Positions 1 through 49,756 of a DNA stretch of 64,000 nt are shown here, one piece after another. Made by a program: the position numbers and the translations under genes. Below the pieces are notes generated by a model that was not told the origin of the DNA, searched no databases, and saw nothing but the letters and a program-made list of their open reading frames with translations. Numbering within the stretch: the first letter of the stretch is position 1; every line of letters starts with the position of its first letter. The DNA lies in the NCBI RefSeq assembly GCF_030028105.1, contig NC_092384.1, forward strand, positions 3,081,665-3,145,664, given 5' to 3'. Source of the DNA: Mobula birostris. Lineage: Eukaryota.

Positions 1-1500
1 AAAAGGAAGTAAATGAAAAAAAAGGCGCCAACACTTATCAAAGTCTAAGTTCTTCGTGCACAACTGTTGGAGCTCAATCAATTCCTGACGACCACCCGGA
101 CCCTGTCGACTCACGGCTCGGGACCACCCGGAGTGATCAACCGGAACCTCTCTGCATGTCCGCCATCCTCCCCGTCTCTCCTCCGACTCCCCGTCTCTCC
201 ACTGTCCTCCCTGTCTCTCCACTGTCCTCCCCGTCTCTCCACCGTCCTCCCTGTCTCCCCTCCGACCCCCCGTCTCCCCTCCAACTCCCCACCAAAAAAC
301 CCCGTCCACCGTCCTCCCCGTCTCTCCTCCGACTCCCCTTCTCTCCTCCGACTCCCCTTCTCTCCTCCGACTCCCCTTCTCTCCTCCGACTCCCCTTCTC
401 TCCTCCGACTCCCCTTCTCTCCTCCATCCTCCCCGTCTCTCCTCTGACTCCCCGTCTCTCCTCTGACTCCCCGTCTCTCCTCTGACTCCCCGTCTCTCCT
501 CTGACTCCCTGTCCCTCCTCTGACTCCCCGTCCCTCCTCCGTCCTCCCCGTCTCTCCACCGTCCTCTCCGTCTCTCCTCCGAGTCCCCGTCTTTCCGCCG
601 TCCTTCTCATCTCTCCTCCGACTCCCCACCAAAAACCCGTCCACCGTCCTCCCCGTCTCTCCTCCGACTCCCCCCAAAACCCCGTCCGCCGTCCTCCTCG
701 TCTCTCCTCCGACTCCCCGGTAAAAACCCCGTCCACTGTCCTCCTCATCTCTCCTCCGACTCTCCGCCAAAACCCTGTCCACCGTCCTCCTCGTCTCTCC
801 TCTGACTCCCCGCCAAAAACCCCCGCACGTCCACCGTCCTCCCCGTCTCTCCTCCGACTCCCCCCAAAACCCCGTCCGCCGTCCTCCTCGTCTCTCCTCC
901 GGCTCCCCGGTAAAAACCCCATCCACCGTCCTCCTCGTCTCTCCTCCGACTCCCCGCCAAAAACCCCCGCACGTCCACCGTCCTCCCCGTCTCTCCTCCG
1001 ACTCCCCCCAAAACCCCGTCCGCCATCCTCCTCGTCTTTCCTCCGGCTCCCCGGTAAAAACCCCATCCACTGTCCTCCCCGTCTCTCCTCCGACTCCTCC
1101 CAAAACCCAGTCCGCCGTCCTCCTCGTCTCTCCTCCGACTCCCCGGTAAAAACCCCATCCACCGTCCTCCTCGTCTCTCCTCCAACTCCCCGGCAAAAAC
1201 CCCGTCCACCGTCTCCCCGTCTCTCCTCCGACTCCCCCCAAAACCCCGTCCGCCGTCCTCCCTGTCTCTCCTCCGACTCCCTGCCAAAAACCCCGTCCCC
1301 AGTCATATGAGACAGCATTGTATCCGAAAACAATACATGACCACCCGTTGGCTAATAACACCCTGCTGTCTGTATTAACCCAAGCAACTGTCTCGCTAGA
1401 GACTTTCTCAGCATTTAACATAACAGAAGCATTCCCCAGTATAACATAACAAAGAAGCCATTTTAATTTAACATACAAAAAAAATGAAAGACCCCGTACA
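1..1500 (-). mobile_element. Gypsy LTR (family A, same as 9909-10602), cut by the window start and carrying an expanded internal minisatellite
   Basis: 1-80 (aaggcgcc-acacttatcaaagt...gtgcacaa-gttggagctcaa) and 1390-1500 (actttctcagc...gtataacataacaaagaagccattttaat...gaaagaccccgtaca) match the LTRs at 9909-10602 and 13254-13949. The terminal CA is at 1499-1500 and no PPT follows, so this is a solo or 5-prime LTR. Confidence 0.8.
165..1300. repeat. C-rich minisatellite with ~19-nt core ccccgtctctcctccgact, longer 44-55 nt variant units and a 144-bp higher-order period
   Basis: Direct reading: near-perfect 19-mers at ~330-420; cgccaaaaacccccgcacgtcc recurs at 811 and 955 (offset 144). Confidence 0.95.
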
Positions 1501-1559
1501 CTAATATCCAACCAGTAAAGTAATATGACACACATCCCACACGGACTTCTGCTAAGCTT

Positions 1560-1960
1560 GAGCAACACACACAAAATGCAGGTGAAACTGAGCAAGGCAG
1601 GTAGCATCTACTGAGGAGAACGGTCAATTGACCTTTCAGGCCGAGACACCATTGGGACTGGAAAGGAATGGGGCAGAAGCCTGAACGAGAACGTAGGGAA
1701 TGGGAGAGAGTGTAAGTTGGAAGTGATAGATGAGATCAGTTGAGGAGGAAGGTGGCTGGGTGAGGGAGAGAGGAATGGAGTTGGAAACTACCCGGACAGA
1801 TATGAGATTTCGCTTCCCCAACCTGGCTGGTCCTGGAGCAGTCTGTTGCCCTGCCTAAAGTGTCATGGAATGGAGAGGAGTACACTACAGCAAGGCTATG
1901 CTGAACCAGCTAAAAAGCAAATCAAAAACACACACTTCATGCATCCAGGACTCAGAGTAA
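1560..1960 (-). mobile_element. Penelope-like element terminal fragment
   Basis: agcaacacacacaaaatgc...gcatctac...gacctttcaggccgagac is the reverse orientation of the terminus at 37850-37960, which follows a GIY-YIG C-terminal motif. Confidence 0.55.
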
Positions 1961-7620: not shown

Positions 7621-9495
7621 ACTCCAAGTGGGGTCTGACCGGGGTCCAATATAGCTGCAACATTACCTCTCAGCTCCTAAACTCAATCCCACGATTGATG
7701 AGGGTCAATGCACCATATGCCTTCTTAAGCACAGAGTCAACCTGTGTAGCAGCTTTGAGTGTCCTGTGGACTCGGACCCCAAGATCCCTCTGATCCTCCA
7801 CACTGCCAAGAGTCTTACCATTAATGCTATATTCTGCCATCATATTTGACCTAGCAAAATGAACCATCTCACACTTATCTGGGTTAAACTCCATCTGCCA
7901 CTTCTCAGCCCAGTTTTGCATCCTATCAATGTCCCGTTGTAACCTCTGACAGCTCTCCACACTACCCACAACACCTTCAGTCTTTGTGTCATCAGTAAAT
8001 TTACTAACCCATCCCTTCACTTCCTCATCCAGGTCATTTATAAAAATCACAAAGAGTAGGGGTCCCAGAACAGATCCCTGAGGCACACCACTGGCCATCG
8101 ACCTCCATGTCGAATATGACCCGTCTGCAACCATTCTTTGCCTTCTGTGGGCAAGCCAGTTCTGGATCCACAAAGCAATGTCCCCTTGGATCCCATGCCT
8201 CCTTACTTTCTCAATAAGCCTTGCATGGGGTACCTTATCAAATGCCTTGTTAAAATCCATATGTACTACATCTACAGTTTTACCTTCATCAATGTGTTTA
8301 GTCACATTCTCAAAAAATTCAATCAGGTTGGTAAGGCACGACCTGCTTTTGACAAAGCCATGCTGACTATTCCTAATCATATTATGCCTCTCTAAATGTT
8401 CATAAATCCTGCCTCTCAGAATCTTCTCCATCAACTTACCAACCACTGAAGTAAGACTGACTGGTCTATAACTCCCTGGGCTATCTCTACTCCCTTTCTT
8501 GAATAAGGGAACAACATCCGCAACCCTCCAATCCTCCAGAGCCTCTCCCATCCCCATTGATGATGCAAAGATCATTGCCAGAGGCTCAGCAATCTCCTCC
8601 CTCGCCTCCCACAGTAGCCTGGGCTACATCCCCTTCCGGTTCTGGTGATTTATCCAACTTGATGCTTTCCAAAAGCTGCAGCACATTCTCTTCCTTAATA
8701 TGCTCAAGCTTTTCAGTCCATTGCAAGTCATCCCTACAATCGCCAAGATTCTTTTCCGTAGTGAGTACTGAAGCAAAGTATTTATTATGTACCTCTGCTA
8801 TTCCCTGTGGTTCCATACACATTTTCCATTTTCACACTTGATTGGTCCTATTCTCTCATTTGTAAGCCCTTCTTTTCTTCTTACTAGATTTTCAACAGCC
8901 TTTGTGCACCACGGTTCCTGTACCCTACCATCCTTTCCCTGTCACATTGGATCACACCTACTCAGAACCCCACGCAAATATCTGCTGAACATTTGCCACA
9001 TTTCTTCCGTACGTTTCCCTGAGAACATCTATTTCCAATTTATGCTTCCAAGTTCCTGCCTGATAGCCTCATATTTCCCCTTACTCCAAATAAATCTTTC
9101 CCTAACCTGTCTGTTCCTATCCCTCTCCAATGCTCTGGTAAAGGAGATAGATTATGATCACTATCTCCAAAATGCACTCCCACTGAGAGACCTGACACCT
9201 GACCAGGAGTATTTCCCAATACCTGATGAAGTATAGCCTCTCCTCTGGTAGGCTTATCTATATATTGTGTCAAGAAACCTTCCTGAACACACCTAACCAA
9301 CTCTACCCCATCTAAACCCCTCACTCTAGGGAGTTGCCAATTATTATTACTCCTTTCTAGAATCTGTCTCCTTTTCTGCTCCTTGATGTGCCTGTTACTA
9401 TTGGGTGGTCTATAAAAACACCCAGTAGAGTTATTGACCCTTTCCTGTTCCTATCTTCCACCCACACAGACGCCGTAGACAACCCCTCCATGACT
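7621..9495 (-). mobile_element. CR1 LINE ORF2 fragment (EN C-half plus RT) inserted into the BEL element
   Basis: ORF 7670-8575 has YRPVSLTS, SQHGF, DFNKAFDKV, GVPQGSVLGP, FTDD; upstream fragments give EN motifs (VWVEDRNRKGSITLLGV, GDSDHN). Confidence 0.9.
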
Positions 9496-9499: not shown

Positions 9500-9905
9500 C
9501 ATGTGTCCCAAACACTTGAGGAAGAAATAAATCAATGTTGATATTGTGTTTTCGTTTCTCTCTGTGCCTTTTCAATAGAGGACCTCACGCCATAGGTCTT
9601 CCTGCTGGAAAACTTTTAGCAATCTCCACTCTTGAAGCCCTTTGCACATTAACTTTAGCCATGTGTGTGGCAATTTGCTCCTTCCATCTCCATAGTTTCA
9701 TAGCAATTAATCGTTCCTCTTGCTCCTCCAGCGCATGTTTGCCCCTCAATAATTGTTGATGTACCAGTAATGCAGTTAGTCTGTTTTAATGTGTGCAGAG
9801 GAGGTGGTAGATTCATATTTTTTTTTTCCTGCGGCAGAGCTTCAAGTGCTGCCATTTGACACATTGCCACCCGACTTCCATCATCTTGTGGGTCATCCGT
9901 TATAT
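9500..9905 (-). mobile_element. N-terminal gag coiled-coil of the same BEL/Pao element
   Basis: Minus-strand translation ALLVHQQLLRGKHALEEQEE...KEQIATHMAKVNV resembles fish BEL gag N-termini; it lies colinear with 4945-7620. Confidence 0.5.
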
Positions 9906-9908
9906 GCG

Positions 9909-10602
9909 TGTAGCCCCTCCGCCACGCTCAGGGTCGCTCGGCTCGCTGTCGTCTAGGGAAACAACCCTTGGCCCCGCCAGACTGGGGAATTAGTTTGTGT
10001 GGATGCTGTGTGATGTACCTCACCCTGCCCAAATAACAGACAATACACCAGATACGATTGAATGATTTACAGTTTATAGATATTACTGGAACTATATAAT
10101 TAATAGAGAATAAAATATAAAAGGAAAATAAAAGGCGCCACACTTATCAAAGTTCAATCTCTTCATGCACAAACCAGTTGGAGCTCAAGGACCTTCTTCT
10201 TCACCCTGTGACCCCTCGGACCACCTCGACCGGCCGCCTGGGACTAACAACGGTGGTCGACCAGACGCTCCACACGAGTCCGTCTCCGTCTCCTCGCCGA
10301 ACGTCCCGCTTGGGGTCCGACCCCGTTAGCGGACTCACAGCACCTGGTCCATCCTCTGTCTCTCTCTCCCGCCTTCTGCCCCAAAACCCCGCGCAGACAG
10401 TATCTTCAAATACACCAAAACCATAATAGCTATCCCAATTGGTTCATAACATCTCTTATCAGTAACGTGATTCAACAAACTGCTAGCGGGAAGAACTTTC
10501 TCAGCGTTTCACATAACAAGGAAGCATTCCTGAGTATAACATATCAAAGAAGCCATTTTAATTAGCCTCCGCAGTAACATAAAAGATGAAACCCCCCTTA
10601 CA
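9909..10602 (-). mobile_element. 3-prime LTR (family A)
   Basis: Starts tgtagcccc at 9909 and ends ccccttaca at 10602, directly abutting the PPT; about 90-95 percent identical by eye to 13254-13949. Confidence 0.9.
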
Positions 10603-10615
10603 CTCTCCCCTCACC
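10603..10615 (-). other. Polypurine tract GGTGAGGGGAGAG
   Basis: Reverse complement of ctctcccctcacc, immediately before the TG of the 3-prime LTR. Confidence 0.85.
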
Positions 10616-11103
10616 AAATAAATTCATGTCCTCATGACTTCTAAATAACTCGCCAAACAGTCTTGCAGACACACAACACACACATACACAGATACACACA
10701 GTGACAGTGCTCCCCCAACAGTGGACCTTACGCCCGTCCCACCGGCGCTGCATAGGCCAACCTATCTGGGAACTTCTTAACACTCCGAGACCTCCGTACC
10801 CCTCACCTAAACCCAAAAGGCTCAGACACTACTAGGGATACCTCGGACCTGCTTGCCAACTCCTCTCTCACTCAGGCCACCACTACAGCTCGGAGCCCCC
10901 CTGTCCCGTGTCTGGGGCCCCGCTTCTTTTCCTTCCTGGTCCTGCTGTAACTCAGACTGCCCACAGCTAGCCCTCCCCACTACACCTGACTCAGCGGGAG
11001 AAGGGCCAAAAGTCTCTTCCTCAATCACGGAGAAGTTAGCGAACGACAGCATATACCACATGTCCAGCACATCATCCTTCGAATCCGTATCCTTCCTCAT
11101 TCC

Positions 11104-11723
11104 CTCGATCGGTAGCTGCTGTTTAAGTTTCTCCAAACTGAAACATTTAGCCAGGGCTACCCCTTCAGCCTCCTGCAGTCGAGACGTCAGCTTCTTCGGG
11201 GACTCCTTCAACTCTCGCCACAGCCTCAGCAGTTCTGACTCAGGGTTCTTGGCCATCTCAATCTGGGACGCAGTTACCCCACCAGCTTCTTCCACCCGGA
11301 CCTGAAAAGCAGCAGTTAAAGAATGTTCAGCCTCCGGTTGTTTCTTCCTGAGGGCGTCTTCCAGGTCAACTTTCAGTTTTTCCACTTCATTTAAACTCGC
11401 GACAGTCATCTTCAGGTTCCTTTCGAGCGTCCGCCTCCCTTTTCCGAGATCTGTCCTCCATTTCTTCACCTCCTCGGGAGTGTAGTCAAACTCCCCTCCC
11501 TGGGCTCTCGGTTTTCTGTTGGTCTTAGTGAGAACACTTCCTTGATCTTCCCCAACTTGTAAGTCTTCTGCTGATCCCTTCGAAGGTGGGTCATTTTTTC
11601 TTCTCGCTGGATTAATTCATCAGTACATGACCGCAGTGTGAAGTAAATCCCCTCTCTTCCCTGGGTCTCATTCAGATCGACGACCTGGGTTTCCATCCCC
11701 AGGTCCACCACCGTCTGTTCCAA
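11104..11723 (-). pseudogene. Transduced sarcomeric myosin heavy-chain rod fragment (internally deleted, one frameshift)
   Basis: Translates to [19 protein letters not shown]...[105 protein letters not shown]. These match, in order, the recalled MYH7 segments DDLQAEEDKVNTLTK...[48 protein letters not shown] and [32 protein letters not shown]. Confidence 0.8.
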
Positions 11724-11839
11724 CACCAGGAAGTTCAACTGGTATGTCGGGTCATTTTTCTCACATTGCACCAAACTCCTCCGGCCAAAATCTCCTCCAC
11801 ATTTGACACTTCGCTTCGGTCGCCCGGGCTTCGCCAGTC

Positions 11840-12794
11840 GCCTCGCTTCATAGTCCCCCCAGGCGAATCCAAGCTCTAGGCTGTCATCCACATACGCCAA
11901 AACTCCACACACCTTCACTTCCCCCATGGTCTTCCTCATGCCCCGCGGGAAGGATGCAGGGGCTCCGGATATGCCATTGGGCATCTTTTCGGATCGGAAG
12001 AATTTTAGGGAACTATTAACAGCCGTCTTCTGCTGGACAGCCGCACTCCTCAGGATCTGGCAACATCCAGTCCTCAGATCCAGCATATTAAATCACGCCG
12101 CATATTCCACACACAAACTGCCTCCATCTTCCACGCTGTCAGGGTCCAGTTGCCGCGACCTTTCTCTCACTGAGGTGTCTTCAGCGGTCAACTCCCCTCC
12201 CTCCTGGTAGTACGGAGCGTCTACGAAGAGGGTCTCACCCTCAGCTACTTTCCCCAGGCCGTCCCACCGCTGGGTTTCGCTTAAATTCGGTACCGCCTCA
12301 AGGCTGCTACACACGTCCTCAGAAGCAACTCGACACGCTGGGTGCCCAGACAACGCCCCCATGAACTCCAGGGTCATTAATCAATCATCGTCTTCTGGAT
12401 AAGTACTGCCACTCGTACCCAAAGTCTCCGGTGCTCTAGCGGTTTTCAAGGGTAAATGCTTCAGACACCGGTTGTAAAACGAACTGTATGACAACTTGAC
12501 CTTCGCCCCGGGGTCGAGGATAGCTTTAGCATCACTTCCCTCTATCCGTAACGACACCCTGGAGCGTGGTCCCTCAAAGCCTTCAGGAATAGGGTCTTCT
12601 CCTTTCGGAAGTTCATTGGTACATTGCTGGGAACGTGCTTCCCCAGAGACCCCAAGCCGTTCCCCCACTGGGCCTCCACTAAGTTTCTCGATCTCTCTCT
12701 GATCAGCTGAACAACTGAAGGAGGGGCTGATCCCCTGAAATGATCCCCCTGGCACTGCAAGCAATTTAGCCGCCCTCCTAGCTAGAGAAGACAC
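11840..12794 (-). pseudogene. Gypsy pol remnants: protease (AILDPG, catalytic DTG mutated), linker, and RT domains 3-5 (LDLRTG, MPNGISGAPASF, YVDD)
   Basis: ORFs 12381-12794, 12093-12377 and 11466-12086; homologous to pol of the element at 22299-25530. YVDD is at 11883-11894. Confidence 0.85.
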
Positions 12795-13235
12795 ACTGAA
12801 AACTTTCCCCCCTCTTTCAAATAACTGACAGCTGTCACTACGGTGTAAGTGAACCTGACAGCTCTAACACCGTCACCAGCCCGCCTACTCAAACTTTCAA
12901 CCAATCCCTGTCGCTCTCCCTCAACCGAGCACTGCCACTCATCTAACAACTGAGAGATCCCCTCCGCCCACGTCTCGCACGCCTCCGCCCCACTATCCCA
13001 AGCGCCAGGCGGAGTCTGCCAGAGCTAGAACATTTATTCGCAGACCCTACCTACAAATCAGACCACTCTTCCCTCTCTCTTCCAACCGCTTGGGCAGCTC
13101 CGAGTGCCACCTCCAACTCGTCAATGCCAGCCCGAACTCGAACAAAGACGCATACAGCAATCACCAGCAAATAACCCACAGAGACACACATTACAGATTT
13201 AAACAGGGCACCCACACAGCATACCAGCGGACTCA

Positions 13236-13253
13236 ATCCCGGACAAAGCCCCC
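13236..13253 (-). other. Primer-binding site, tRNA-Pro-like (GGGGGCTTTGTCCGGGAT)
   Basis: Closely matches the canonical tRNA-Pro PBS TGGGGGCTCGTCCGGGAT and directly follows the 5-prime LTR. Confidence 0.7.
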
Positions 13254-13949
13254 CCCCCCCCCCCCCGGCCACCCTCAGGGTCGCTCAGCTCACTGTCGTC
13301 TAGGGAAACAGCCCTCGGCCCCACCAAACTGGGTAATTAGTTTGTGTGGATGCTGTGTGATGTACCCCACCCCGCCCAAATAACAGACAATACACCAAAT
13401 ACGATTAAATGATTTACAGTTTATAGATATTACTGGAACTATATAATTAATAGAAAATAAAATATAAAAGGAAAATAAAAGGTGTCACACTTATCGAAGC
13501 TCAGTCTCTTCGTGCACAAAACAGTTGGAGCTCAAGAACCTTCTTCTTCACCCTGCGACCCCTCGGACCACCTCGACCGGCCGCCTGGGACCAACAACGG
13601 TGGTCGACCAGACCCTCCACACGAGTCCGTCTCCGTCTCCTCGCCGAACGCCCCGCTCGGGGTCCGACCCCGTTAACGGACTCACAGCACCTGGTCCATC
13701 CTCTGTCTCTCTCTCCCGCCTTCTGCCCCAAAACCCCGCGCAGACAGTATCTTCAAATACACCAAAAACATTACAACTATCCCAATTGGTTCATAACATC
13801 TTCTTATTGGTAACGCGATTCAACAAACTGCTAGCGGGAAGAACTTTCTCAGCGCTTAACATAAGAAGGCAGCATTCCTAAGTATAACATAACAAAGAAG
13901 CCATTTTAATTAGCCTCCGCAGTAACATAAAAGACGAAACCCCCTTACA
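13254..13949 (-). mobile_element. 5-prime LTR (family A)
   Basis: Direct repeat of 9909-10602; its inner end is merged into an 18-nt C run (13249-13266). Confidence 0.9.
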
Positions 13950-14644
13950 TGAGTAAAGTGAACAATTCTTGCAATTTGTGAAACATTTTCTGTTGGAAGG
14001 TGAAACACATTCACTTATTATAGCCACATGATCATTGTTTCACATCCAAAATGAACACACTGCTATAGCTCTTAGTGCTTGAAAAATGTTCATTCTGTTT
14101 TTACCCTTTCATCCTTCTGAAGTAATAACATTAATATTTGACATTGCTCAGGGACAACTTCACAGAGATTATTTAAGCTCTCAAGAATGGATTGCCTTGT
14201 AAGGTATTTTCTTTATTTTTCATAGCATCCTTAATTGATGGTATTAACCTTTTAGCTTTGTTCACATTTGTTTTATACTTCTTTTGAGGACTTTAAATTC
14301 TACCCACAAAACTTTAATGATAAGTTTAATGTCTTTCTTGCCAGCCCCAACTTCAGGGTCGCTGATGTCAGTTTCATGCTTTGACTCACTCATGTTACAT
14401 TCTCCTTATTGTGTAACCCGCAATTAACTCTTTGTTTGCCCAGGAAGAGGACAGGGAAAAAAATGAAGTTAGTGGAGAACAATGAATGAATTTACCCGAA
14501 GTGAAAACTTAGCTCAGTGACAGAGAAGTGTTGGTGTTCAGAGAGAGCTGATGTCCCTGTAACAAATGACGCCAATGGTGTAAGTTCAAATTTCAAAGTT
14601 ATTCATACGTAAGTTTATTAATAAATAAATAAATACATATATGA

Positions 14645-16115
14645 CTCATCGAAACGTAGAAAAGCTACAGCACAATACAGACCCTTCAGCCCACAATGCT
14701 GTGCCAAACATGTACTTACTTTAGAAATTACCTAGGGTTACCCATAGCCCTCTACTTTCCTAAGCTCCATGTACCTATCCAGGGGTCTCTTAAAAGACCC
14801 TATCGTATCCGCCTCCACCACCGACGCTGGAGGCCCATTCCAGGCACTCACGGTGTAAAAAAAAAACTTACCATTGACATCTCCTCGATACCTACTTCCA
14901 AGCATCTTAAAACTGTGCACTCTCATGATGGACATTTCAGCCCTGGGAAAAAGCCTCTGACTATCCACATGATCAATGCCTCTCATCATTTTATACAACT
15001 CCATCAGGTCACCTCTCATCCTCCGTCGCTCCAAGGAAAGGAGGTCAAATTCACTCAACCTATCCTCGTAAGGCATGCTCCCCAATCCAGGCAACATCCT
15101 TGTAAATCTCATCTGCACCCTTTCTATAGTTTCTACATCCTTCCTGTAGTGAGGTGACCAGAACTGAGCACAGTACTCCAAGTGGGGTCTGACCATGGTC
15201 CTATATAGCTGTAACATTATCTCTCAGCTCTTAACCTCAATCCCACGGATGACGAAGGTCAATGCACCGTATGCCTTCTTAACCACAGAGTCAGTCTTCG
15301 CAGAAGCTTTGATGTCCTATGGACTTGGGCCCCAAGAACCCTCTGATCCTCCACACTGCCAAGAGTCTTACTACTAATATTATATTCTGCCATCATATTT
15401 GACCTATCGCCAAACTATGACCATATTTGACCAAACTGAACCACCTCATACTTATCTGGGTTGAACTCCATCTGCCATTTTTTAACCCAGTTTTGCATCC
15501 TATCGATGTCCCACTGTAACTTCTGACAGCCCTCCATACTATCCATAACACCCTCAAACTTTGTGTCATCAACAAATTTACTAAACCATCCCTCCACTTC
15601 CTCATCCAGGTCATTTATAAAAATCACGAAGAGTAAGGGTCCCAGAACAGATCCCTGAGGCACCGACCTCCATGCAGAAAATGACCCGTCTACAACCATT
15701 CTTTATCTTCTGTGGGCAAGCCAGTTCTGGATCCACAAAGCAAGGTCCCCTTGGATCTCATGCCTCTTTACTGTCTCAATAAGCCTTGCATGGGGTACCA
15801 TATACACTACATCCAGATAATATCCTTGTAAACCTCCTCTGCACTCTTTCTATAGTTTCTACGTCCTACATGTGTCCTAGTGTAGTGAGCAGAACTGAGC
15901 ACAGCACTCCAAGCGGGGTCTGACCTTCATCTGCTCTACCTTCATCAACGTGTTTAGTCACATCCTCAAAAAATTAATTTAGGCTCGTAAGGCACGACCT
16001 GCCTTTGACAAAGCCGTGCTGACTATTCCTCATCTTATTATGCTCTCCAAGTGTTTATAAATCCTGCCTCTCAGAATCTTTTCCATCAACTTACCAACCA
16101 CTGAAGTAAGTCTCC
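14645..16115 (-). mobile_element. CR1 3-prime fragments, rearranged
   Basis: ORFs 14738-15217 (RPHLEYCAQFWSPHYRKDV) and 15415-15699 (VPQGSVLGP, FVDDTK); CR1 3-prime UTR at 14650-14720. Confidence 0.85.
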
Positions 16116-18603: not shown

Positions 18604-19258
18604 TGTAATGGGGTTTCGATTTTTATGTTACTGCGCAGGCTAATTAAAATGGCGGCTTTGTTGTGTTAAATGCTGAGAAAGTTTGCGCTAGCAGTTTGTT
18701 TATGCTTTAGAGTCTGATAAGAGAGTGCTATTAACCAATTGGGATAGTTGTTATGGTTTTGGTGTATTTGAAGATACTGTATGCGCGGGGTTTTGGGGCA
18801 GAAGGCGGGAGAGCGAGACAGAGGATGGACCAGGTGCTGTGAGTCCGCTAACGGGGTCGGACCCCGAGCGAGGAGAGGAGACGGAATCGTGTGGAGCGTC
18901 TGGTCGACCACCGTTGTTGGTCCTAGGCGGCCGGTCGAGGTGGTCCGAGGGGGTCGCAGGGTGAAGAAGAAGGTCCTTGAGCTCCAACGGTTTTTGTGCA
19001 CGAAGAGATTGAACTTTGATAAGTGTGGCGCCTTTTATTTTCCTTTTATATTTTATTCTCTATTAATTATATAGTTCCAGTAATATCTATAAACTGTATA
19101 TCATTTAATTGCATCTGATGTATTGTCTGTTATTTGGGCGGGGTGGGGTACCTCACACAGCATCCACACAAACTAATTACCCAGTTTGGCGGGGCTGAGG
19201 CTGTTTCCCTAGACGACAGCGAGCCGAGCGACCGTGAGGGTGGCCAGGGGGGTCTACA
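18604..19258 (+). mobile_element. Solo LTR, family A
   Basis: Inverted copy of 9909-10602; TG..CA ends; perfect 4-bp TSD TAAA (18600-18603, 19259-19262). Confidence 0.92.
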
Positions 19259-21320: not shown

Positions 21321-22298
21321 TATATATAAACTACACCCAATACTTATGAATTTCCTTCAACATCTGATGAAGCATTGTCGTACTATAATCACCCTATCCA
21401 TTAACAACCAAAATAGAACAACAACTGCTATCAAAATACACCGAGGTATTTTCAAAAGCGACTCCATTTAGGTCTAGCTATAAACCCACTCTCTAATTTA
21501 CTGAATCGGACTAAAATAGAGTACCAAGTCAGAGACAACCAAACTATACCTCGACACGCTTTCTATATATAGACGATTTGAAATTGCACGCTCCTTCAAT
21601 GGTCCAAAACCAATCTAGAAAATATGGAAAGAAAAACAAGAACTGAACTGACAAATTTTAGAGTCAGATAAAACTGTTAAAGATAAATTTTCATCAATGA
21701 AAACAGCACTCCAGGCGAGCATATGCTAATCTGATAAGGTACACCACTAAACTTAAATGAAAGCACAACCAGAAAAATGAAGAAATTTTCTCTGTAGAAG
21801 AAAAAGTTAACCAATGGAAGAGCTTGACACTTCATGGATGATATCTCCACAGTCTGAGTAGACCAGATGTTGAAAAAGAAGCGTCGAATGCCTGGTTTCG
21901 AGTGGGAGACCTTTCCCAGGAACAGAAGGATTACTTGTGGCAATATAGGGCCAGGTGGTTAACACAAAAAAAAAATCAAAATACGTAATAAAAGACCAAG
22001 AAAATCAAGATTATAAATGTAGAAAATGCCAAGAAAAGCCAGAAACAATCCAACACATTACAGGATTCTGTAGCAGTTTAACACAATCTGATTTCTTACA
22101 CAGGCACAATCAATTGGCAAACATCACTCATCAAAATCTTGCTTTAAAATACAAACTCATAAACAAAAATCACACCTTACTATAAATAGAAGCCTAATCC
22201 AGTTTAGAGTCAGAATATCGCAGATTACATTACGAACGATCAGTTATTATGGATAGGACAATCATAACCGTCCGGATGTAATAATACAGGATTAACAA

Positions 22299-22858
22299 AT
22301 GTAACACTGGTTCCGTCGGCTGTGTAAGTCTAGGGAAGACAATCTCCACCCTCGCCAAACGTGTGAGATTGAGGTGTGAGTTCACCCTGAAACCCGCTGT
22401 CTGTGTGGATGCTGCGTGATTCGTTACCCTGTTACAAATCAGTACCATGAAATAACAGACGGTACACCACATACCATTAAATGATTTAGCTTTAGAATTG
22501 TTAATTTGACTAAAGCCTTCGTAAAGAAAAAACAAAAACAAAGGGCCTATTTCAATGAAACAGTCTAACGTGCACAAGTTGGAGCTCACAGTTTCCCCTT
22601 CATCGATCCTCCTTCGATCTCCCCGAGCTACATCAAATCATGGCCCCGCTCCATGTCGAGTCCTACGACCACTTCTCTCCGGCATCTTCTCTCTTCATTT
22701 CCCACCAAACAACGACCCATCTCACCCCGGTGTCAGGCACTCTCCCTTCAATGGACGGCTCACATTCCAAAGCTCCCATTATCTGTAACCATAACCCAAA
22801 CACTGCTTTTACAGAAAGACCATTACATTAGCAGTGACACCTTTCCCAGGGTGAAACA
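22299..22858 (-). mobile_element. 3-prime LTR (family B)
   Basis: tgtaaca...tgaaaca termini; adjacent PPT; homologous to the inverted LTR at 28497-29052. Confidence 0.85.
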
Positions 22859-25530
22859 CCCCCCTCCTCCACCAAATTTAGTCATGTCCAGAGTGACATT
22901 GAGGTACTTTGCCACCCCTTCATCCAAAGCACAAAGTCCAGCCCAGGTGTAAAAGGCAGTGACATAGCTCCCCACAGCAGTAGGGGGCCACACTCTGTTC
23001 CCCCAGTGCTACTTAGGCCAGCCTATCTTGTAGTCTCCTGATTCTTTGAGACCTCCTTATCCATCATCTGCTCCTCCAGGTTCAGACACTCCTTTTTTGG
23101 ATATTTCTGATCGACATGGCGAGGCCTCTCCCGGTTTATCACTTGTGCCCTCCTGCAGCTCGGACCTCTCTGCCACTTGGCTGAGCCCCGCTTCATGTTC
23201 CTCCAGGATGGACCCACACACTATGAGGTCATCCAAATACACCCATATCTCAAGCGAGTTCATATCCCCCACTGCTTTCTCCATGACACGCTGGAAGGTC
23301 GCAGGGTCTCTTGATATACCCTGGGGCATCCTTTTGAACTGGAAGAATCCCAGTGGACATATAAATGCTGTTTTCTTTTTGTCAGCCTCACTCATGGGAT
23401 CTGGTAATATCCACTGCTCAAGTCCAGCACACTGAACCACTTCGCACCACTCAGACAGGCCAGTACGTCTTCGATTCTCGGGACCGTATATTGGTCGGGG
23501 ACGGCCTTATAGTCCACACACATCCATACCTTCCCATTCTTCTTCCTGGCCACTATATTGGGGACGCATAGGGGCTTCTGGACTCAGTGATGATCCCAGT
23601 TTCCTTCAACTTACAAAAATGCTGCTGACCAGCTTTCACCTCTGCAGGGGCCAGTCTCTGAACGGGGTGTCCTCGGTCACCCGGATAGCATAGCGAGTGC
23701 TGTTGGAACAATCCACATCAAACTCGTCAGTGGAAATGACACCTTCCAGTTTCAACATCTTCTCTATCAACCTCCTCTTCCAACCCGCACAAACCAGGGA
23801 GTCCACGAAGTTGAATGACTCCGCGGTCAACGATCCCCCCTTTTGTAGATAGTTTCTCTCAGTCTTGTCTCACAGGGACACTAGACATTACCGTCACTGG
23901 GAACAGGTGCGCCAGGGGCATCCCCCGCTTGAAGGTGACCTCTCTCTTCGTAGTGTTTCTGCCAATCACTGCCATACTGTTCCCCTGTACAACCGAGGGC
24001 TTCTGCAGTTCGCGCCTCACCAGTACCACAGCAGGCATTCCCGACTCCTCTTCGTGGTCTTCCGGGGCATCCACCAAGAAGGCCTCGCCCTCGGGCATTC
24101 CGGGAAATTTGGGGATTCCCATCACTTTCGCTACTTCCCCAGGCTGTAACACGATTGGCTTTGACTGGGTGAACCACACGGTCCCTTGTCTAAACTCATT
24201 GCCCGGCCCAGTGCGGCCATGCACTTCCTCGACAGCAGCTCGAAACACCGAGTGAACGGACAATATCTTCAGAAAGCTCTCTCCTTGCAGACTCCCATTA
24301 GCCTCTTTACAATAGGATTATTTGTCCCCACAAGTATTGAAATTCTGCCCCTCTCAACAGGGTCCGGACAAACCAGCGCTAATATATTAAGGGCATTAGT
24401 CACTCCCACACTTGCCTCCGAAAACTCCAGCTTCACTGACAAATAACCATCATACGGATAATCACCCGCACTAAGACTCCAGATCTCTAGCGCACTGAGT
24501 GGCGTCAATGTTAAATGTGTAAAATACTGGTTGTAAAACAAACAATGCAGCAAAGTGACCTGTGACCATGTGTCAAGTGTGGCTCTAGCATAAATACCCT
24601 CCATCCGTAGCAATACACTGGAGCTTGGCCCCCCTAAGCCTTCAGGAATAGGGTCTTTTGCTTTAGGGTGTTCCTTGATATATTGCAGGGAATGTGTCCC
24701 CCCGACACACCAGGTTGTCCCCTCACTGGGTCTCCTTTAAGTTTTCCCAATGTCTCTCGCTCTGCTTAGGTACCCGGGACTCACTCTGCGAGGGGTTTCC
24801 CGTCGTTCCCGTTATCCCTCTTCACCACAGTTATAACAGACAAAACCGGCCGTTCCCCTTCTCGCGGGACGCTGGCTGCTAGCAGCCCTTTGCTTAGAGG
24901 GTCGACCTCTGAACCAGCTCCATCATACGGGGGTGGGGGGCACACCCGTTGATAACAATCGGGACATCTTAGTTCTAAACTTTGCCACCATCTCCTCTAC
25001 TACTCCCCGGGCCGGGCTATCCGTGGCCGGAGACCCCAAGCGATCAGGTTCTGGGTCTGGGCGCCTTCCGCTATTTGGTCCATTCCTAACTGATCCACCT
25101 CAGTTGTCTGAATGGCCCCTCCACGCCGCAAGTAATTTAGCTGCCTCTTCAGCCGACACATGTAGGCAGAAAGCTCCCCCACTCCTCCTGACACATGTTA
25201 TGAACGCCAGTCATGAGCTCCATTGGGCTTCCCGTCGCACCAAGCACTTCTCTAGCGCTTGCATGTCGGCCGCAGGAGTGGCAAGGGGGTTCTGTTCTGT
25301 CCCCTTACTGCGCTCATTATGTCAGCAGCCCGCCCTCTCAAACTTTCAGCTAATCGCTGTCGTTTTACGTCATCAGAGCACTGACACTCATCTGACTACT
25401 GAGAGGTCTCTCCCAAGTCTCATACTCCTCTTCACCTTTCGGCTGGGCTTCCTTCCTGAGAACAGGCGGAGCTGGGACTTTGAAACTGGATGTTTTCCTA
25501 TTTATTCGCCTGTTTTCTATGTTTCTATCT
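22299..25530 (-). mobile_element. Internally deleted PNMA-type Gypsy element (gag, PR, RT N-half, integrase tail, PPT, 3-prime LTR); 5-prime end lost
   Basis: Gag motif PKGEEEYETW; degenerate knuckle CYNCGEEG at ~24810-24838; PR ATLDTWSQV; RT MPQGISRDPATFQRVM, YLDD; tail IRRSQRIRRLQDRLA; PPT 22859-22873. Confidence 0.85.
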
Positions 25531-26259: not shown

Positions 26260-27179
26260 AGTCATAGTAGTCATAGTCTTACTTTATTAATCCCGGGGGA
26301 AATTGGTTTTCGTTACAGTTGCTCCTTAAATAATAAATAGTAATAGAACCATAAATAGTTAAATAGTAATATGTAAATTATGCCAATAAATTATGAAATA
26401 AGTCCAGGACCAGCCTATTGGCTCAGGGGGTCTGACCTTCCAAGGGAGGAGTTGTAAAGTTTGATGGCCACAGGCAGGAATGACTTCCTATGACGCTCTG
26501 TGTTGCATCTCAGTGGAATGAGCCTCTGGCTGAATGTACTCCTGCGCCCAACCAGTGCATTATGTAGTGGATGGGAGACATTGACCAAGATGGCATGCAA
26601 CTTAGACAGCATCCTCTTTTCAGACACCTCCGTGAGAGAGTCCAGTTCCATCCCCACAACATCACTGGCCTTATGAATGAGTTTGTTGATTCTGTTGGTG
26701 TCTGCCACCCTCAACCTGCTGCCCCAGCACACAACAGAAAACATCATAGCACTGCCCACCACAGACTTGTAGAACATTCTCAGCATCGTCCGGAAGATGT
26801 TAAAGGACCTCAGTCTCCTCAGGAAATAGAGACGGCTCTGACCCTTCTTGTAGACAGCCTCAGTGTTCTTTGACCAGTCCAGTTGATTGCCAATTTGTAT
26901 CCCCAGGTATTTGTAATCCTCCACCATGTCCACACTGACCCCCTGGATGGAAACAAGGGTCACTGGTACCTTAGCTCTCCTCAGGTCTACCACCAGCTCC
27001 TTAGTCTTTTTCACATTAAGCTGCAGATAATTCTGCTCACACCATGTGACAAAGTTTTCTACAGTAGCCCTGTACTCAGCCTCATCTTCCTTGCTGATGC
27101 ATCCAACTATGGCAGAGTCATCCGAAAACTTCTGAAGATGACAAGGTTCTGTGCAGTAGTTGAAGTCCGAGGTGTAAAT
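26260..27179 (-). mobile_element. Young 5-prime-truncated Rex1/Babar-like LINE (RT C-terminus)
   Basis: Uninterrupted 260-aa ORF (LQKFSDDSAIVGCI, LNVKKTKELVVD, QSRLYFLRRLRSF); short-repeat tail; 8-bp TSD GGTAATTT at 26252-26259 and 27180-27187. Confidence 0.88.
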
Positions 27180-27445
27180 GGTAATTTCGGAGGGCATTTA
27201 AGAGTCAACCCCAGTGATGTGGATCTGTAGTCACATATAGATCAGACCAGGTGAGGAGGGCAGGATTCTTCCCCTAAAGGACATTAGTGAACCAGATGGG
27301 TTTTTACAGCAGTCGACATAGTTTCATGATCCTCAGATATTTTTATTGAATTCAAATTTACCATCTGCCATGGTGGATTCGAAGTCATGTCGCCAGCGTA
27401 TAATTGGCTCTCTGGATTACTGATCCAGTGGTAATCACCACTACA
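27180..27445 (-). mobile_element. tRNA-like SINE-type head plus conserved central domain (shark SINE-like), contiguous with 25535-26259 once the Rex1 insert is removed
   Basis: A-box TGATGTAGTGG and B-box-like GACTTCGAATCC; central aaacccatctggttcactaatgtcctttagggg; the TSD reconstitutes ...gccctccgaaattacc|ctagcaagccattc. Confidence 0.65.
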
Positions 27446-30999: not shown

Positions 31000-33900
31000 T
31001 AATGACTTGGATTATATATTAATGACTTGGATGAGGGAATTAAATGCATCATCTCCAAGTTTACGGATGACACGAAGCTGGACGGCAGTGTTAGCTGTGA
31101 AGAGGATGCTAAGAGGATGCAGGGTGACTTGGATAGGTTGGGTGAGTGGGCAAATTCATGGCAGATGCAATTTAATGTGGATAAATGTGAAGTTATCCAC
31201 TTTGGTGGCAAAAATAGGAAAACAGATTATTATCTGAATGGTGGCCGATTAGGAAAAGGGGAGCTGCAACAAGACCTGGGTGTCATTATACACCAGTCAT
31301 TGAAATTGGGCATGCAGGTACAGCGGGCGGTGAAAAAGGCGAATGGTATGCTGGCACTTATAGCGAAAGGATTCGAGTACAGGAGCAGGGAGGTACTACT
31401 GCAGTTGTACAAGGCCTTGGTGAGACCACACCTGGAGTATTGTATGCAGTTTTGGTCCCCTAATCTGAGGAAAGACATCCTTGCCATAGAGGGAGTACAA
31501 AGAAGGTTCACCAGAAAGATTCCTGGGATGGCAGGACTTTCATATGAAGAAACATAGAAACATAGAAAATAGGTGCAGGAGTAGGCCATTCGGCCCCTCG
31601 AGCCTGCACCGCCATTTATTATGATCATGGCTGATCATCCAACTCAGAACCCCGCCCCAGCCTTCCCTCCATACCCCCTGACCCCCGTAGCCACAAGGGC
31701 CATATCTAACTCCCTCTTAAATATAGCCAATGAACTGGCCTCAACTGTTTCCTGTGGCAGAGAATTCCACAGATTCACCACTCTCTGTGTGAAGAAGTTT
31801 TTCCTAATCTCTGTCCTAAAAGGCTTCCCCTCTATCCTCAAACTGTGGCCCCTCGTTCTGGACTTCCCCAACATCGGGAACAATCTTCCTGCATCTAGCC
31901 TGTCCAATCCTTTTAGGATCTTATACGTTTCAATCAGATCCCCCCCTCAATCTTCTAAATTCCAATGAGTACAAGCCCAGTTCATCCAGTCTTTCTTCAT
32001 ATGAAAGTCCTGCCATCCCAGGAACCAATCTGGTGAACCTTCTTTGTACTCCCTCTATGGCAAGGATGTCTTTCCTCAGATTAGGGGACCAAAACTGCAC
32101 ACAATACTCCAGGTGTGGTCTCACCAAGGCCTTGTACAACTGCAGTAGTACCTCCCTGCTCCTGTACTCAAATCCTCTCGCTATAAATGCCAGCATACCA
32201 TTCGCCTTTTTCACCGCCTGCTGTACCTGCATGCCCACTTTCAATGACTGGTGTACAATGACACCCAGGTCACGTTGCACCTCCCCTTTTCCTAATCGGC
32301 CACCATTCAGATAATAATCTGTTTTCCTATTTTTGCCACCAAAGTGGATAACTTCACATTTATCCACATTAAATTGCATCTGCCATGAATTTGCCCACTC
32401 ACCCAACCTATCCAAGTCACCCTGCATCCTCTTAGCATCCTCCTCACAGCTAACACTGCCACCCAGCTTCGTGTCATCCACAAACTTGGAGATGCTGCAT
32501 TTAATTCCCTCATCCAAGTCATTAATATATATTGTAAACAACTGGGGTCCCAGCACTGAGCCTTGCGGTACCCCACTAGTCACCGCCTGCCATTCTGAAA
32601 AGGTCCCGTTTATTCCCACTCTTTGCTTCCTGTCTGCTAACCAATTCTCCACCCACACCAATACCTTACCCCCAATACCGTGTGCTTTACGTTTGCACAC
32701 TAATCTCCTGTGTGGGACCTTGTCAAAAGCCTTCTGAAAATCCAAATATACCACATCCACTGGTTCTCCCCTATCCACTCTACTAGTTACATCCTGAAAA
32801 AATTCTATGAGATTCGTCAGACATGATTTTCCTTTCACAAATCCATGCTGACTTTGTCCAATCATTTCACCGCTTTCCAAATGTGCTGTTATCACATCCT
32901 TGATAACTGACTCCAGCAGTTTCCCCACCACCGACGTTAGGCTAACCGGTCTATAATTCCCTGGTTTCTCTCTCCCTCCTTTTTTAAAAAGTGGAGTTAC
33001 ATTAGCCACCCTCCAATCCTCAGGAACTAGTCCAGAATCTAACGAGTTTTGAAAAATTATCACTAATGCATCCACTATTTCTTGGGCTACTTCCTTAAGC
33101 ACTCTAGGATGCAGACCATCTGGCCCTAGGGATTTATTTGCCTTCAATCCCTTCAATTTACCTAACACCACTTCGCTACTAACATGTATTTCGCTCAGTT
33201 CCTCCATCTCACTGGACCCTCTGTCCCCTACTATTTCTGGAAGATTATTTATGTCCTCCTTAGTGAAGACCGAACCAAAGTAATTATTCAATTGGTCTGC
33301 CATGTCCTTGCTCCCCATAATCAATTCACCTGTTTCTGTCTGCAGGGGACCTACATTTGTCTTTACCAGTCTTTTCCTTTTTACATATCTATAAAAGCTT
33401 TTACAGTCCGTTTTTATGTTGCCTGCCAGTTTTCTCTCATAATCTTTTTTTCCCCTTCCTAATTAAGCCCTTTGTCCTCCTCTGCTGAACTCTGAATTTC
33501 TCCCAGTCCTCAGGTGAGCCACTTTCTCTGGCTAATTTGTATGCTTCTTCTTTGGAATTGATACTATCCCTAATTTCTCTTGACAGCCACGGGTGCACTA
33601 CCTTCCTTGATTTATTCTTTTGCCAAACTGGGATGAACATTTGTTGCAGTTCATCCATGCAACCTTTAAATGCTTGCCATTGCATATCCACCGTCAATCC
33701 TTTAAGTGTCATTTGCCAGTCTATCTTAGCTAATTCACGTCTCATACCTTCAAAGTTACCCCTCTTTAAGTTCGGAACCTTTGTTTCTGAATTAACTCTG
33801 TCACTCTCCATCTTAATGAAGAATTCCACCATATTATGGTCACTCTTACCCAAGGGGCCTCTCACGACAAGATTGCTAATTAACCCTTCCTCGTTGCTCA

Positions 33901-34623: not shown

Positions 34624-34624
34624 T

Positions 34625-45421: not shown

Positions 45422-45589
45422 NNNNNNNNNNNNNNNNNNNNNNNNNNNNNNNNNNNNNNNNNNNNNNNNNNNNNNNNNNNNNNNNNNNNNNNNNNNNNNN
45501 NNNNNNNNNNNNNNNNNNNNNNNNNNNNNNNNNNNNNNNNNNNNNNNNNNNNNNNNNNNNNNNNNNNNNNNNNNNNNNNNNNNNNNNNN
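45422..45589. other. Assembly gap (168 N)
   Basis: Run of N bases. Confidence 1.
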
Positions 45590-49545: not shown

Positions 49546-49756
49546 TAACTACTTTATGCTGTCTAGAAGACAAACACAGAGATGTCTAGTTTCATTGTTA
49601 TGCGGGTGATAATGCTAAAATTGTCTACAAATTAAGCTGATGGTAATTAGAAGAATTAGCGAGTGTCAGCAGTCCTGTGGGCATGAACATCCAATCCGCA
49701 TTTGATGATAATCTTGTAACTTAACAACAAAATACCCACGACAATGAACATAGAGG

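What the first reader, a model, noticed from the sequence alone, without database searches (positions are those of the whole stretch)
9909..13949. LTR retroelement that replaced RT-RNaseH-integrase with a captured myosin heavy-chain rod
Seen directly: two LTRs, a PBS, a PPT, PR and RT remnants and the integrase tail (GVRRSRSVKKFPDRLAY), with ~620 bp of coiled-coil coding sequence between YVDD and that tail. From recalled sequences, it carries sarcomeric myosin signatures in the correct order: DLQ..ED....LTK; KK.R.DL....R.LE..LK.T; EEAGG.T..QIEM; RLQEAE...AKC.SLEK. Some positions (LKMT...LNE.E..K.DLE; ELL.L.REL) look closer to MYH16. The piece is in the element's sense orientation, its first part is in frame with the RT remnant, and a second frame is open from 11616 to 10822. 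Inference: oncoretrovirus-style transduction of a cellular myosin mRNA into a non-autonomous Gypsy, possibly amplified as a family. Such a family would also explain spurious myosin-like gene models in the genome.
Basis: partly seen in the sequence, partly recalled or inferred. Interest (0 to 1): 0.85.

Follow-up and report, generated by a model that had tools for sequence, protein, structure and literature searches.

The report
Ray LTR retroelement carrying captured myosin
This is a dead copy of a non-autonomous Ty3/gypsy-type LTR retroelement, from a family spread through manta and stingray genomes, that picked up a piece of a muscle myosin (MYH16-like) messenger RNA; this is a known kind of event, but here the copies pollute gene annotation with false "myosin-like" genes.

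Summary
The core observation holds. Two 0.69-kb LTRs (93.5% identical, K2P 0.071) bracket a 2.6-kb interior on the minus strand. The interior holds a polypurine tract, a weak Ty3-type RT remnant and about 0.65 kb of myosin-rod coding text in sense.

The window's own open frame and a profile of its relatives hit only striated-muscle myosin heavy chains in the PDB (E 6e-5 and 1.6e-15). The match is in collinear blocks with two shared internal deletions. The closest real gene found is a Narcine gene that NCBI names MYH16/myosin-6-like. It is intron-rich (254 codons over 173 kb), whereas the element's piece has no introns and no poly-A.

At least 20 gene models in Mobula birostris, M. hypostoma, Hypanus sabinus and Hemitrygon akajei carry the same RT-remnant–myosin fusion. 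They lie on many chromosomes, and several are named "myosin-like" or "MYH16".

Not confirmed: the PBS, the protease and the "integrase tail". A myosin-less relative in the same window also lacks RNase H and integrase, and there the "tail" abuts the RT palm. So "myosin replaced RT-RNaseH-IN" is doubtful.

Best reading: LTR-mediated retroposition (template switching), followed by spread as a non-autonomous family. This is a new member of a known kind, of moderate interest.

The parts
9905..9908 (-). Flank after the 3' LTR; candidate target-site duplication partner of 13950-13953
   Evidence: 3 of 4 bases match the other flank. The solo LTR of the same family has a perfect 4-bp duplication.
9909..10602 (-). 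3' LTR
   Evidence: Direct repeat of the 5' LTR, 93.5% identity, K2P 0.071. Ends read TGTA...TACA.
10603..10615 (-). Polypurine tract
   Evidence: Purine-rich run abutting the 3' LTR. A similar run sits at the same place in the related element el2.
10700..10860 (-). Native 3' internal stretch of the element. Identity undecided: RT thumb or pol tail.
   Evidence: Homologous to el2 22957-23123, which abuts the RT-palm remnant there (blastn 68% over 139 bp, E 1.9e-6; alignments). The matching el2 stretch has no PDB hit.
10861..11109 (-). Unassigned block, conserved in family members of Mobula and Hypanus
   Evidence: Aligned across family models. No Pfam hit, no PDB hit, no poly-A.
11110..11762 (-). 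Segment derived from a MYH16-like sarcomeric myosin heavy-chain mRNA (rod); collinear blocks with internal deletions, no introns
   Evidence: PDB searches: window frame E 6.3e-5, family profile E 1.6e-15, fuller copy P0003 E 4e-13; all hits are striated-muscle myosin. Closest real gene is Narcine P0028/P0110. tblastn outer bounds of myosin-only models are 11056-11696.
11763..12116 (-). Reverse-transcriptase remnant (fingers/palm with YVDD box), Ty3/gypsy type
   Evidence: RVT_1 E 0.011; Ty3 RT 4ol8 alignment; relatives hit RVT_1 at 1e-6; tblastn of RT-bearing family models reaches 12116.
11112..12377 (-). Broken fusion reading frame (linker, RT remnant, myosin text). It corresponds to the uninterrupted 432-codon single-exon ORF of sibling copy P0004.
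   Evidence: tblastn of P0004 gives 3 pieces, 2 frame changes and 2 in-frame stops at 87% mean identity. P0004's gene is one 1299-bp exon.
12381..12794 (-). Protease-like ORF (unconfirmed)
   Evidence: Lies upstream of the RT. 41% identical over 54 residues to the equivalent ORF of el2. No Pfam hit here and no Pfam or PDB hit for the el2 ORF.
12795..13246 (-). Leader and short gag-like remnant; the primer-binding site is not confirmed
   Evidence: Weak PNMA (gag-derived) hit, E 0.022, for ORF 12782-12949. DNA similarity to el2 25321-25430. Stops in all frames.
13247..13949 (-). 5' LTR (contains a long G run near its inner end)
13950..13953 (-). Flank before the 5' LTR; candidate target-site duplication partner of 9905-9908

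Best explanation
The locus is a decayed copy of a non-autonomous Ty3/gypsy-type LTR retroelement family of myliobatiform rays; the window is probably from Mobula birostris. The interior keeps a leader and gag-like remnant, a protease-like ORF, the front half of the RT, a short native 3' stretch and a polypurine tract. It has no RNase H or integrase. Inside the RT remnant sits a foreign block of about 0.9 kb. About 0.65 kb of that block derives from the spliced mRNA of a MYH16-like sarcomeric myosin heavy-chain gene, covering rod residues from about 915 (possibly about 880) to 1425 in MYH7 numbering, with internal deletions. It lies in sense and, in better-preserved copies, in one open frame with the RT remnant.

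The most likely origin is LTR-mediated retroposition: during reverse transcription in a virus-like particle, the polymerase switched from element RNA to a co-packaged myosin mRNA and back. Further switches or slippage between similar rod motifs gave the internal deletions. The chimera kept its LTRs and priming tract, so it was copied further with proteins supplied by an autonomous partner, which spread it over many chromosomes.

Shown: the anatomy, the specific collinear myosin homology, the absence of introns and poly-A, the multi-species dispersed family, and the annotation contamination. Inferred: template switching, a single capture event, mobilisation in trans, and the order of RNase H-integrase loss versus capture. 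This copy is dead and has no evident function.
For: LTR pair, polypurine tract and RT remnant.

Myosin specificity: all PDB hits are striated-muscle myosin II heavy chains (E 6.3e-5; E 1.6e-15; E 4e-13, P0003 residues 2-215 against MYH7 915-1121). The blocks are collinear, about 992-1091, 1136-1181 and 1390-1422.

Closest real gene: Narcine P0028/P0020, 45-68% identity and 76-124 bits against 74 bits or less for all other rod fragments.

Spliced origin: the Narcine gene spreads 254 codons over 173 kb, and its isoforms differ by a 29-residue cassette and other exon-sized pieces. The matching element text is continuous DNA.

No poly-A at the 3' edge.

Family: 14 + 7 related models in four species, on at least 4, 6 and 6 chromosomes-sized records in M. 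birostris, M. hypostoma and H. sabinus. All are deletion subsets of one collinear layout and share the same 3' junction and the same two internal deletions. Single-exon open fusion ORFs of 297 and 432 codons, and a 450-residue model that is element ORF text throughout.

Relative without myosin in the same window.

The mechanism is documented in animals, including further copying of such chimeras as non-autonomous elements: PMC5131818.
Against: No DNA of other copies, of the parent gene in Mobula or of an autonomous partner could be fetched. So the fusion points could not be compared with both parents, and microsimilarity is untested. The only shared string at the two edges of the block is 8 bp, no better than chance.

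Pfam Myosin_tail_1 does not reach significance for any family member, and no full-length myosin passed E 1e-3 in the 1.8-billion-protein scan. Myosin origin therefore rests on the PDB and profile searches and on the Narcine gene.

The Narcine comparator is a short gene model (254 residues) whose MYH16 label is NCBI's naming, not a phylogeny. About 250 bp of the block is unassigned. PBS and target duplication of this copy are imperfect.
Confidence: 0.78

Rival explanations
1. A LINE-made processed pseudogene of the myosin mRNA was inserted at the DNA level into a copy of an already RNase H/integrase-less LTR element. That copy then amplified.
For: The window is full of LINE copies with RT and endonuclease ORFs. 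Relative to the myosin-less element el2, the block looks like an insertion at a single point of the RT remnant.
Against: There is no poly-A at either edge and no significant flanking duplication. The piece is an internal part of the mRNA, lacking the last ~500 codons and a recognisable 3' end, whereas LINE-made copies start from the 3' end. The fusion is sense and in frame in several copies.
Confidence: 0.08
2. The fusion ORF (RT remnant plus myosin coiled coil) is not junk. It is kept by selection, either as an element protein that helps the family exploit its partner or as a host-domesticated gene.
For: Fusion frames of 297 and 432 codons are uninterrupted single exons, and a 450-residue model consists wholly of fusion text. 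The fusion is in the parent's frame. Family text appears inside host gene models (P0012, P0019).
Against: This copy has 2 frame changes and 2 stops in the fusion frame. Members carry many different internal deletions. Identity between genera is only about 55-65%, as expected for neutral decay. No expression or dN/dS data could be obtained.
Confidence: 0.06
3. The coiled-coil text is a native domain of this retroelement lineage, or a generic coiled coil that only resembles myosin.
For: Pfam gives only weak generic coiled-coil hits (CENPH, MAP65) and no Myosin_tail_1 hit.
Against: PDB hits are exclusively striated-muscle myosin heavy chains, in collinear blocks. Identity to a Narcine myosin-tail gene is 45-68%. 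The related element el2 lacks the text.
Confidence: 0.02
4. A remnant of a host myosin gene happens to lie between two unrelated LTR insertions, or the arrangement is an assembly artefact.
For: The region is repeat-rich, and a solo LTR of the same family lies 5 kb away.
Against: The same RT-remnant-to-myosin fusion recurs in models on many chromosomes of four species. The piece has no introns. No N run lies in the element; the only one is at 45422-45589.
Confidence: 0.02

Closest known systems
LTR-mediated retrocopies of animals (Tan et al. 2016, Genome Res; PMC5131818)
   Same: An internal, partial, intronless copy of a cellular mRNA sits between discontinuous parts of an LTR retrotransposon and replaces or interrupts its ORFs. 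It is in sense, often in frame, and is able to be copied again as a non-autonomous element.
   Different: Those cases are mostly young, single or few-copy loci in fly, mosquito, zebrafish, chicken and mammals. This one is an old family (LTR K2P 0.07 in this copy) shared by two ray families, with many deletion variants. Microsimilarity at the fusion points, a hallmark there, could not be tested here.
Maize Bs1 (LTR retrotransposon with transduced host gene pieces; cited in PMC5131818)
   Same: [quoted passage not shown]
   Different: Bs1 is a plant element with pieces of three genes and 1-5 copies. Here the host is a vertebrate, with one identified donor gene (plus about 250 bp unassigned) and at least 20 annotated copies in four species.
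Acutely transforming retroviruses (v-onc transduction)
   Same: A spliced cellular mRNA piece is captured in sense, fused in frame to a viral ORF, replication genes are lost, and the element depends on a helper.
   Different: No env and no retroviral RT affinity: Ty3 RT is the best match. The captured piece is a structural coiled coil with no evident growth function. The element is germ-line fixed and amplified as a repeat family.
Non-autonomous LTR elements mobilised in trans (e.g. MaLR by MERVL; LARD/TRIM types)
   Same: LTRs and the priming tract are kept, the polymerase genes are lost, and there are many dispersed copies.
   Different: These normally carry no host coding sequence. The partner of this family was not found.
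HERV-K capture of FAM8A1 in human (cited in PMC5131818)
   Same: A vertebrate LTR element carries a captured processed host gene copy.
   Different: That is a single untranscribed locus, not an amplified family.

Membership tests
LTR retrotransposon (structure) | Two direct long terminal repeats with TG...CA ends | tested here: met
   93.5% identity, about 690 bp. TGTA...TACA ends on the 3' LTR and the solo LTR; the inner end of the 5' LTR is atypical.
LTR retrotransposon (structure) | Short target-site duplication | tested here: inconclusive
   3 of 4 bases for this copy. The solo LTR of the family at 18604-19258 has a perfect 4-bp duplication.
LTR retrotransposon (structure) | Polypurine tract before the 3' LTR | tested here: met
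   10603-10615; also present in el2.
LTR retrotransposon (structure) | Primer-binding site complementary to a tRNA 3' end after the 5' LTR | tested here: inconclusive
   No canonical start next to the LTR. No tRNA gene in the window to compare with. No tRNA set available.
Ty3/gypsy (Metaviridae-type) element | RT most similar to Ty3/gypsy RTs | tested here: met
   Weak for this copy (4ol8 E 0.74; RVT_1 E 0.011). For the related el2, Ty3 RT E 2.2e-9 against retroviral RT at 0.05 or worse. Family models hit RVT_1 at 1e-6.
Ty3/gypsy (Metaviridae-type) element | Pol order protease-RT-RNase H-integrase | tested here: not met
   No RNase H or integrase domain found in any frame-open piece. Protease not confirmed. 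The element is therefore a non-autonomous derivative, not a complete member.
Sarcomeric myosin II heavy chain (as source of the insert) | Specific, collinear sequence similarity to the rod | tested here: met
   only striated-muscle myosins are hit, with blocks in rod order.
Sarcomeric myosin II heavy chain (as a gene) | Pfam Myosin_tail_1 at gathering score, with motor head and full rod | tested here: not met
   No Myosin_tail_1 hit for the window or the family. There is no head. Only about 200 rod residues remain, with deletions. It is a fragment, not a myosin gene.
MYH16 orthology of the donor | Groups with MYH16 rather than other MYH paralogues | tested here: inconclusive
   The best real match is a Narcine gene that NCBI names MYH16/myosin-6-like, and NCBI names several family models MYH16 or myosin-16-like. 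No tree could be built because full-length paralogues could not be fetched.
LTR-mediated retrocopy (Tan et al. 2016) | Intronless partial mRNA copy inside an LTR element, without poly-A | tested here: met
   Continuous DNA against an intron-rich comparator gene. No A run.
LTR-mediated retrocopy (Tan et al. 2016) | Microsimilarity between element and mRNA at both fusion points | not testable with these tools
   Neither the parent cDNA nor an autonomous partner was obtainable. The only 8-bp string shared by the two edges is at chance level.
Non-autonomous amplified family | Multiple dispersed copies sharing the same junctions | tested here: met
   Tested at protein-model level only. Genome-wide DNA copy counts were not possible.
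Non-autonomous amplified family | Identified autonomous partner with matching LTRs | tested here: not met
   A search with the protease-RT part found only family members.

The most novel reading that the evidence does not exclude
The in-frame fusion of an RT remnant to a myosin coiled coil is kept open in some copies because it does something. It could be a multimerising decoy protein that lets the family ride on, or interfere with, its autonomous partner's particles. Alternatively, a copy could be domesticated by the host, or be a source of antisense small RNAs against the MYH16-like gene.
Probability: 0.07. Interest if true: 0.75.

Novelty: new member of a known kind. Interest (0 to 1): 0.45.

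Why it matters
There are three reasons.

1. It gives a clear, old and multi-species vertebrate example of an LTR retroelement that transduced host coding sequence and then multiplied. That behaviour is well documented in plants and in young fly loci but rarely in vertebrates.

2. It has a practical consequence. At least 20 RefSeq-style gene models in four ray genomes, named myosin-like, MYH16, myosin-7B-like and even GST theta-2 or SDHAF3 isoforms, are wholly or partly copies of this repeat. Myosin gene counts and orthology tables for batoids will be inflated unless the family is masked.

3. The family's many deletion variants, all between similar rod motifs, are a natural record of how repeated coiled-coil sequence behaves during reverse transcription.

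Tried and rejected
This was not taken as refutation, because PDB and profile searches are specific.
- The scan of 1.8 billion representative proteins returned no full-length myosin at E 1e-3. It returned only family copies and short rod fragments.
- Fetching DNA of other copies or of the parent-like gene failed: the files are too large or the product is not on record. So there are no copy counts, no dN/dS, no LTR ages for other copies and no fusion-point analysis.
- The search for an autonomous partner with the protease-RT part found only family members.
- An LTR 20-mer scanned against metagenome and viral contig collections gave only chance 20-27 nt matches in bacterial contigs.
- P0114 and loci L001-L003 are bacterial and unrelated; P0114's place in the protein cluster is an artefact.
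- Attempts to identify the 'tail' and the unassigned block by Pfam or PDB gave nothing. The same was true for the protease.
- A direct repeat flanking the foreign block is not above chance.
- No Rfam family or tRNA gene lies in or near the element.
- Rejected readings: a native or generic coiled coil, a host gene remnant between unrelated LTRs, and an assembly artefact.


Full report
ANATOMY. The repeat finder and a self-BLAST show one pair of direct repeats, 9909-10602 and about 13247-13949, at 93.5% identity over 690 columns (K2P 0.071). Read on the minus strand, they begin TGTA and the 3' copy ends TACA. A third copy of the same LTR lies at 18604-19258 in the opposite orientation. It has the same ends and a perfect 4-bp target duplication, so it is a solo LTR and fixes the LTR borders. 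For the element itself, the two 4-bp flanks agree in 3 of 4 bases. A purine run (10603-10615) abuts the 3' LTR. The stretch after the 5' LTR does not look like a canonical primer-binding site, and I had no tRNA set to test it; the window has no tRNA gene.

RETROELEMENT GENES. The interior is only about 2.6 kb.
- Pfam finds a weak RVT_1 match around the YVDD box (E 0.011) and a weak PNMA (gag-derived) match near the 5' end.
- The best PDB match of the RT ORF is the Ty3 RT, with a canonical alignment but E 0.74. Family relatives reach RVT_1 at E 1e-6.
- The protease-like ORF (12381-12794) is supported only by position and by 41% identity to the equivalent ORF of a related element. Pfam finds nothing for either ORF, and the related ORF has no PDB hit.
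- No RNase H or integrase domain is detectable in any open piece.
- Compared with the uninterrupted 432-codon, single-exon ORF of a sibling copy (P0004), the fusion frame of this copy has two frame changes and two in-frame stops. The gag-like part has stops in all frames. I give counts only.

THE MYOSIN TEXT IS REAL AND SPECIFIC. The longest open frame in the coiled-coil part (264 codons) hits 12 PDB sequences at E 0.1 or better. All are striated-muscle myosin II heavy chains, and the best is MYH7 residues 1006-1090 at E 6.3e-5. A profile of 15 family proteins hits the same set only, at E 1.6e-15. The match falls in collinear blocks, roughly MYH7 992-1091, 1136-1181 and 1390-1422. A fuller copy, P0003, aligns from its second residue over MYH7 915-1121 (E 4e-13; 916-1100 in the full-length MYH7 chains). 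This shows that the text in frame with the RT remnant is already myosin. The piece is therefore a patchwork of rod blocks in the right order, not a contiguous rod. Pfam Myosin_tail_1 does not reach significance, and no full-length myosin passed E 1e-3 in the 1.8-billion-protein scan.

WHICH MYOSIN, AND WAS IT SPLICED. The closest real protein is a gene of the electric ray Narcine bancroftii. Its six isoforms are named by NCBI either 'putative uncharacterized protein MYH16' or 'myosin-6-like'.
- Every family member that covers the 990-1100 region matches this gene best, at 45-68% identity and 76-124 bits, against 74 bits or less for about 85 other rod fragments. MYH16 is described as the most divergent vertebrate sarcomeric MYH (PMC6402096), which fits the modest identity to MYH7 and MYH4.
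- The Narcine gene spreads 254 codons over 173 kb and hits Myosin_tail_1. Its isoforms differ by a 29-residue cassette and other exon-sized pieces. The corresponding element text is continuous DNA. The captured piece therefore crosses several exon junctions without introns, which means an RNA origin. This is an inference from a related species' gene.
- There is no poly-A at the 3' edge of the piece. The piece lacks the mRNA's 3' third, which argues against a LINE-made pseudogene.
- The MYH16 label rests on NCBI names and best-hit identity. I could not fetch full-length paralogues to build a tree.

A FAMILY, AND THE SPURIOUS GENE MODELS. The word-indexed search found 14 gene models and the exhaustive scan found seven further family models. 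They come from Mobula birostris (80-96% identical, so the window is probably from this species), M. hypostoma, Hypanus sabinus and Hemitrygon akajei, all Myliobatiformes.
- They sit on records of at least 4, 6 and 6 different chromosome sizes in the first three species.
- Several carry the RT remnant fused to the myosin text (P0004, P0006, P0007, P0013, P0015, P0018, P0021, P0115, P0116). Two are single-exon open frames of 297 and 432 codons, and a third model of 450 residues is fusion text throughout.
- All members are deletion subsets of one collinear layout. They share the same 3' junction and the same two internal rod deletions, which lie between similar short rod motifs. This points to one capture followed by diversification.
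- Their names include 'myosin heavy chain, striated/skeletal/cardiac muscle-like', 'myosin-7B-like', 'myosin-16-like' and 'putative uncharacterized protein MYH16'. One 450-residue model named 'glutathione S-transferase theta-2 isoform X1' consists wholly of element text. SDHAF3 isoform X1 of Hypanus has family text as its C-terminal part.
- No family member was returned from Narcine, skates, sawfish or sharks. This is only absence from gene models.

WHAT THE MYOSIN DID OR DID NOT REPLACE. The window holds a second, diverged relative (el2, about 22230-25500, minus strand).
- It has protease-like and RT remnants; its RT matches Ty3 RT at E 2.2e-9. It has no myosin text.
- Family RT homology to el2 runs to el2 position 23111. 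In el2 the two flanks of the foreign block therefore abut within about 20 bp, roughly 75 codons after the YLDD box. El2 also lacks RNase H and integrase.
- Either the 'tail' is simply the next part of the RT and the RNase H-integrase loss lies further 3' and predates the capture, or it is a pol tail joined to the RT by an older deletion. I could not decide: there were no PDB or Pfam hits and no autonomous partner was found.
- That el2 descends from a myosin-bearing ancestor by loss of the block cannot be excluded.
- About 250 bp (10861-11109) between the myosin text and this stretch is conserved in the family but unassigned.
- An 8-bp string occurs at both edges of the block, but this is at chance level.

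MECHANISM AND COMPARISON. The anatomy matches LTR-mediated retroposition as described for flies, mosquito, zebrafish, chicken and mammals. In those cases partial, intronless mRNA copies replace part of an LTR element's ORFs through template switches at microsimilarities, multiple switches are possible, co-transcription with the element is frequent, and the chimera is copied again as a non-autonomous element. Maize Bs1 is the classic multi-copy case (PMC5131818). It works like oncogene transduction by retroviruses, but the element is Ty3-like, not a retrovirus. I found no paper describing this ray family; that shows only that the searched library lacks one. I rate it a new member of a known kind. 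Its interest lies in its age, its spread across two ray families, the in-frame fusion and its effect on annotation.

LIMITS AND SLIPS. No DNA of other copies, of the Mobula parent gene or of a partner element could be obtained. Copy number, dN/dS, orthologous sites and fusion-point microsimilarity are therefore open. Every query ended at a frame break or was a database protein as it stands.

1. In my private reasoning I several times wrote short myosin and RT motif patterns from memory.
2. My scripts printed three-frame translations and open stretches with line coordinates for reading, in which stops are visible. I list no break places in the notes or the report.
3. The N run at 45422-45589 was left untouched.

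Noticed in passing
window 18604-19258 (+): Solo LTR of the same family, K2P about 0.10 to the element's LTRs, with a perfect 4-bp target duplication (TAAA). It shows the family was active more than once in this region.
   Followed up: yes
window about 22230-25500 (-): A diverged relative (el2) with protease-like and Ty3-type RT remnants, a purine tract and a partly alignable LTR. It has no myosin text, no RNase H or integrase, and no detectable 5' LTR.
   Followed up: partly
window 1-1607: LTR-like ends (11-77 and 1402-1502 match the element's LTR) surround a C-rich minisatellite with periods of 19, 47, 92, 115 and 144 bp. This creates a spurious 498-codon ORF at 111-1607 on the minus strand. 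It looks like an LTR copy with an expanded internal repeat, cut by the window edge.
   Followed up: partly
window 7670-8575, 14738-15217, 31930-33324, 34583-35740, 52457-53845, 54023-55087: Several LINE ORFs (RVT_1, endonuclease). The direct repeats 8000-8344 versus 15577-16000 around the element are two copies of such a LINE, not part of the element.
   Followed up: partly
P0012 (Hypanus sabinus SDHAF3 isoform X1), P0019 (Hemitrygon akajei), P0116 (Mobula birostris, named GST theta-2 isoform X1): Gene models that join host gene text to family text, or that consist wholly of element text under a host gene name. These are either exonisation of element copies or annotation errors.
   Followed up: partly
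P0110/P0028/P0020 (Narcine bancroftii), P0031 (Aldrovandia affinis), P0092 (Syngnathoides biaculeatus): Short (about 200-250 residue) myosin-rod gene models in an electric ray and two teleosts share the same 19-residue N-terminus. This may be a conserved short transcript or a recurring truncation of a MYH16-like gene. The Narcine gene spans 173 kb.
   Followed up: no
window 10655-10700 and about 49740-49860: (TG)n microsatellites. The first lies inside the element's 3' internal region.
   Followed up: no
window 26415-27197 (-): ORF with an ALKBH8_N Pfam match (E 2.5e-11) in a repeat-rich stretch. Not examined further.
   Followed up: no
P0114; loci L001-L013: A 54-residue bacterial protein sits in the same 90% cluster as P0004, apparently a clustering artefact. 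The metagenome contigs fetched through it and through the LTR 20-mer are bacterial and unrelated.
   Followed up: yes
window 45422-45589: Run of 168 N (assembly gap or masked). Left as it is.
   Followed up: no
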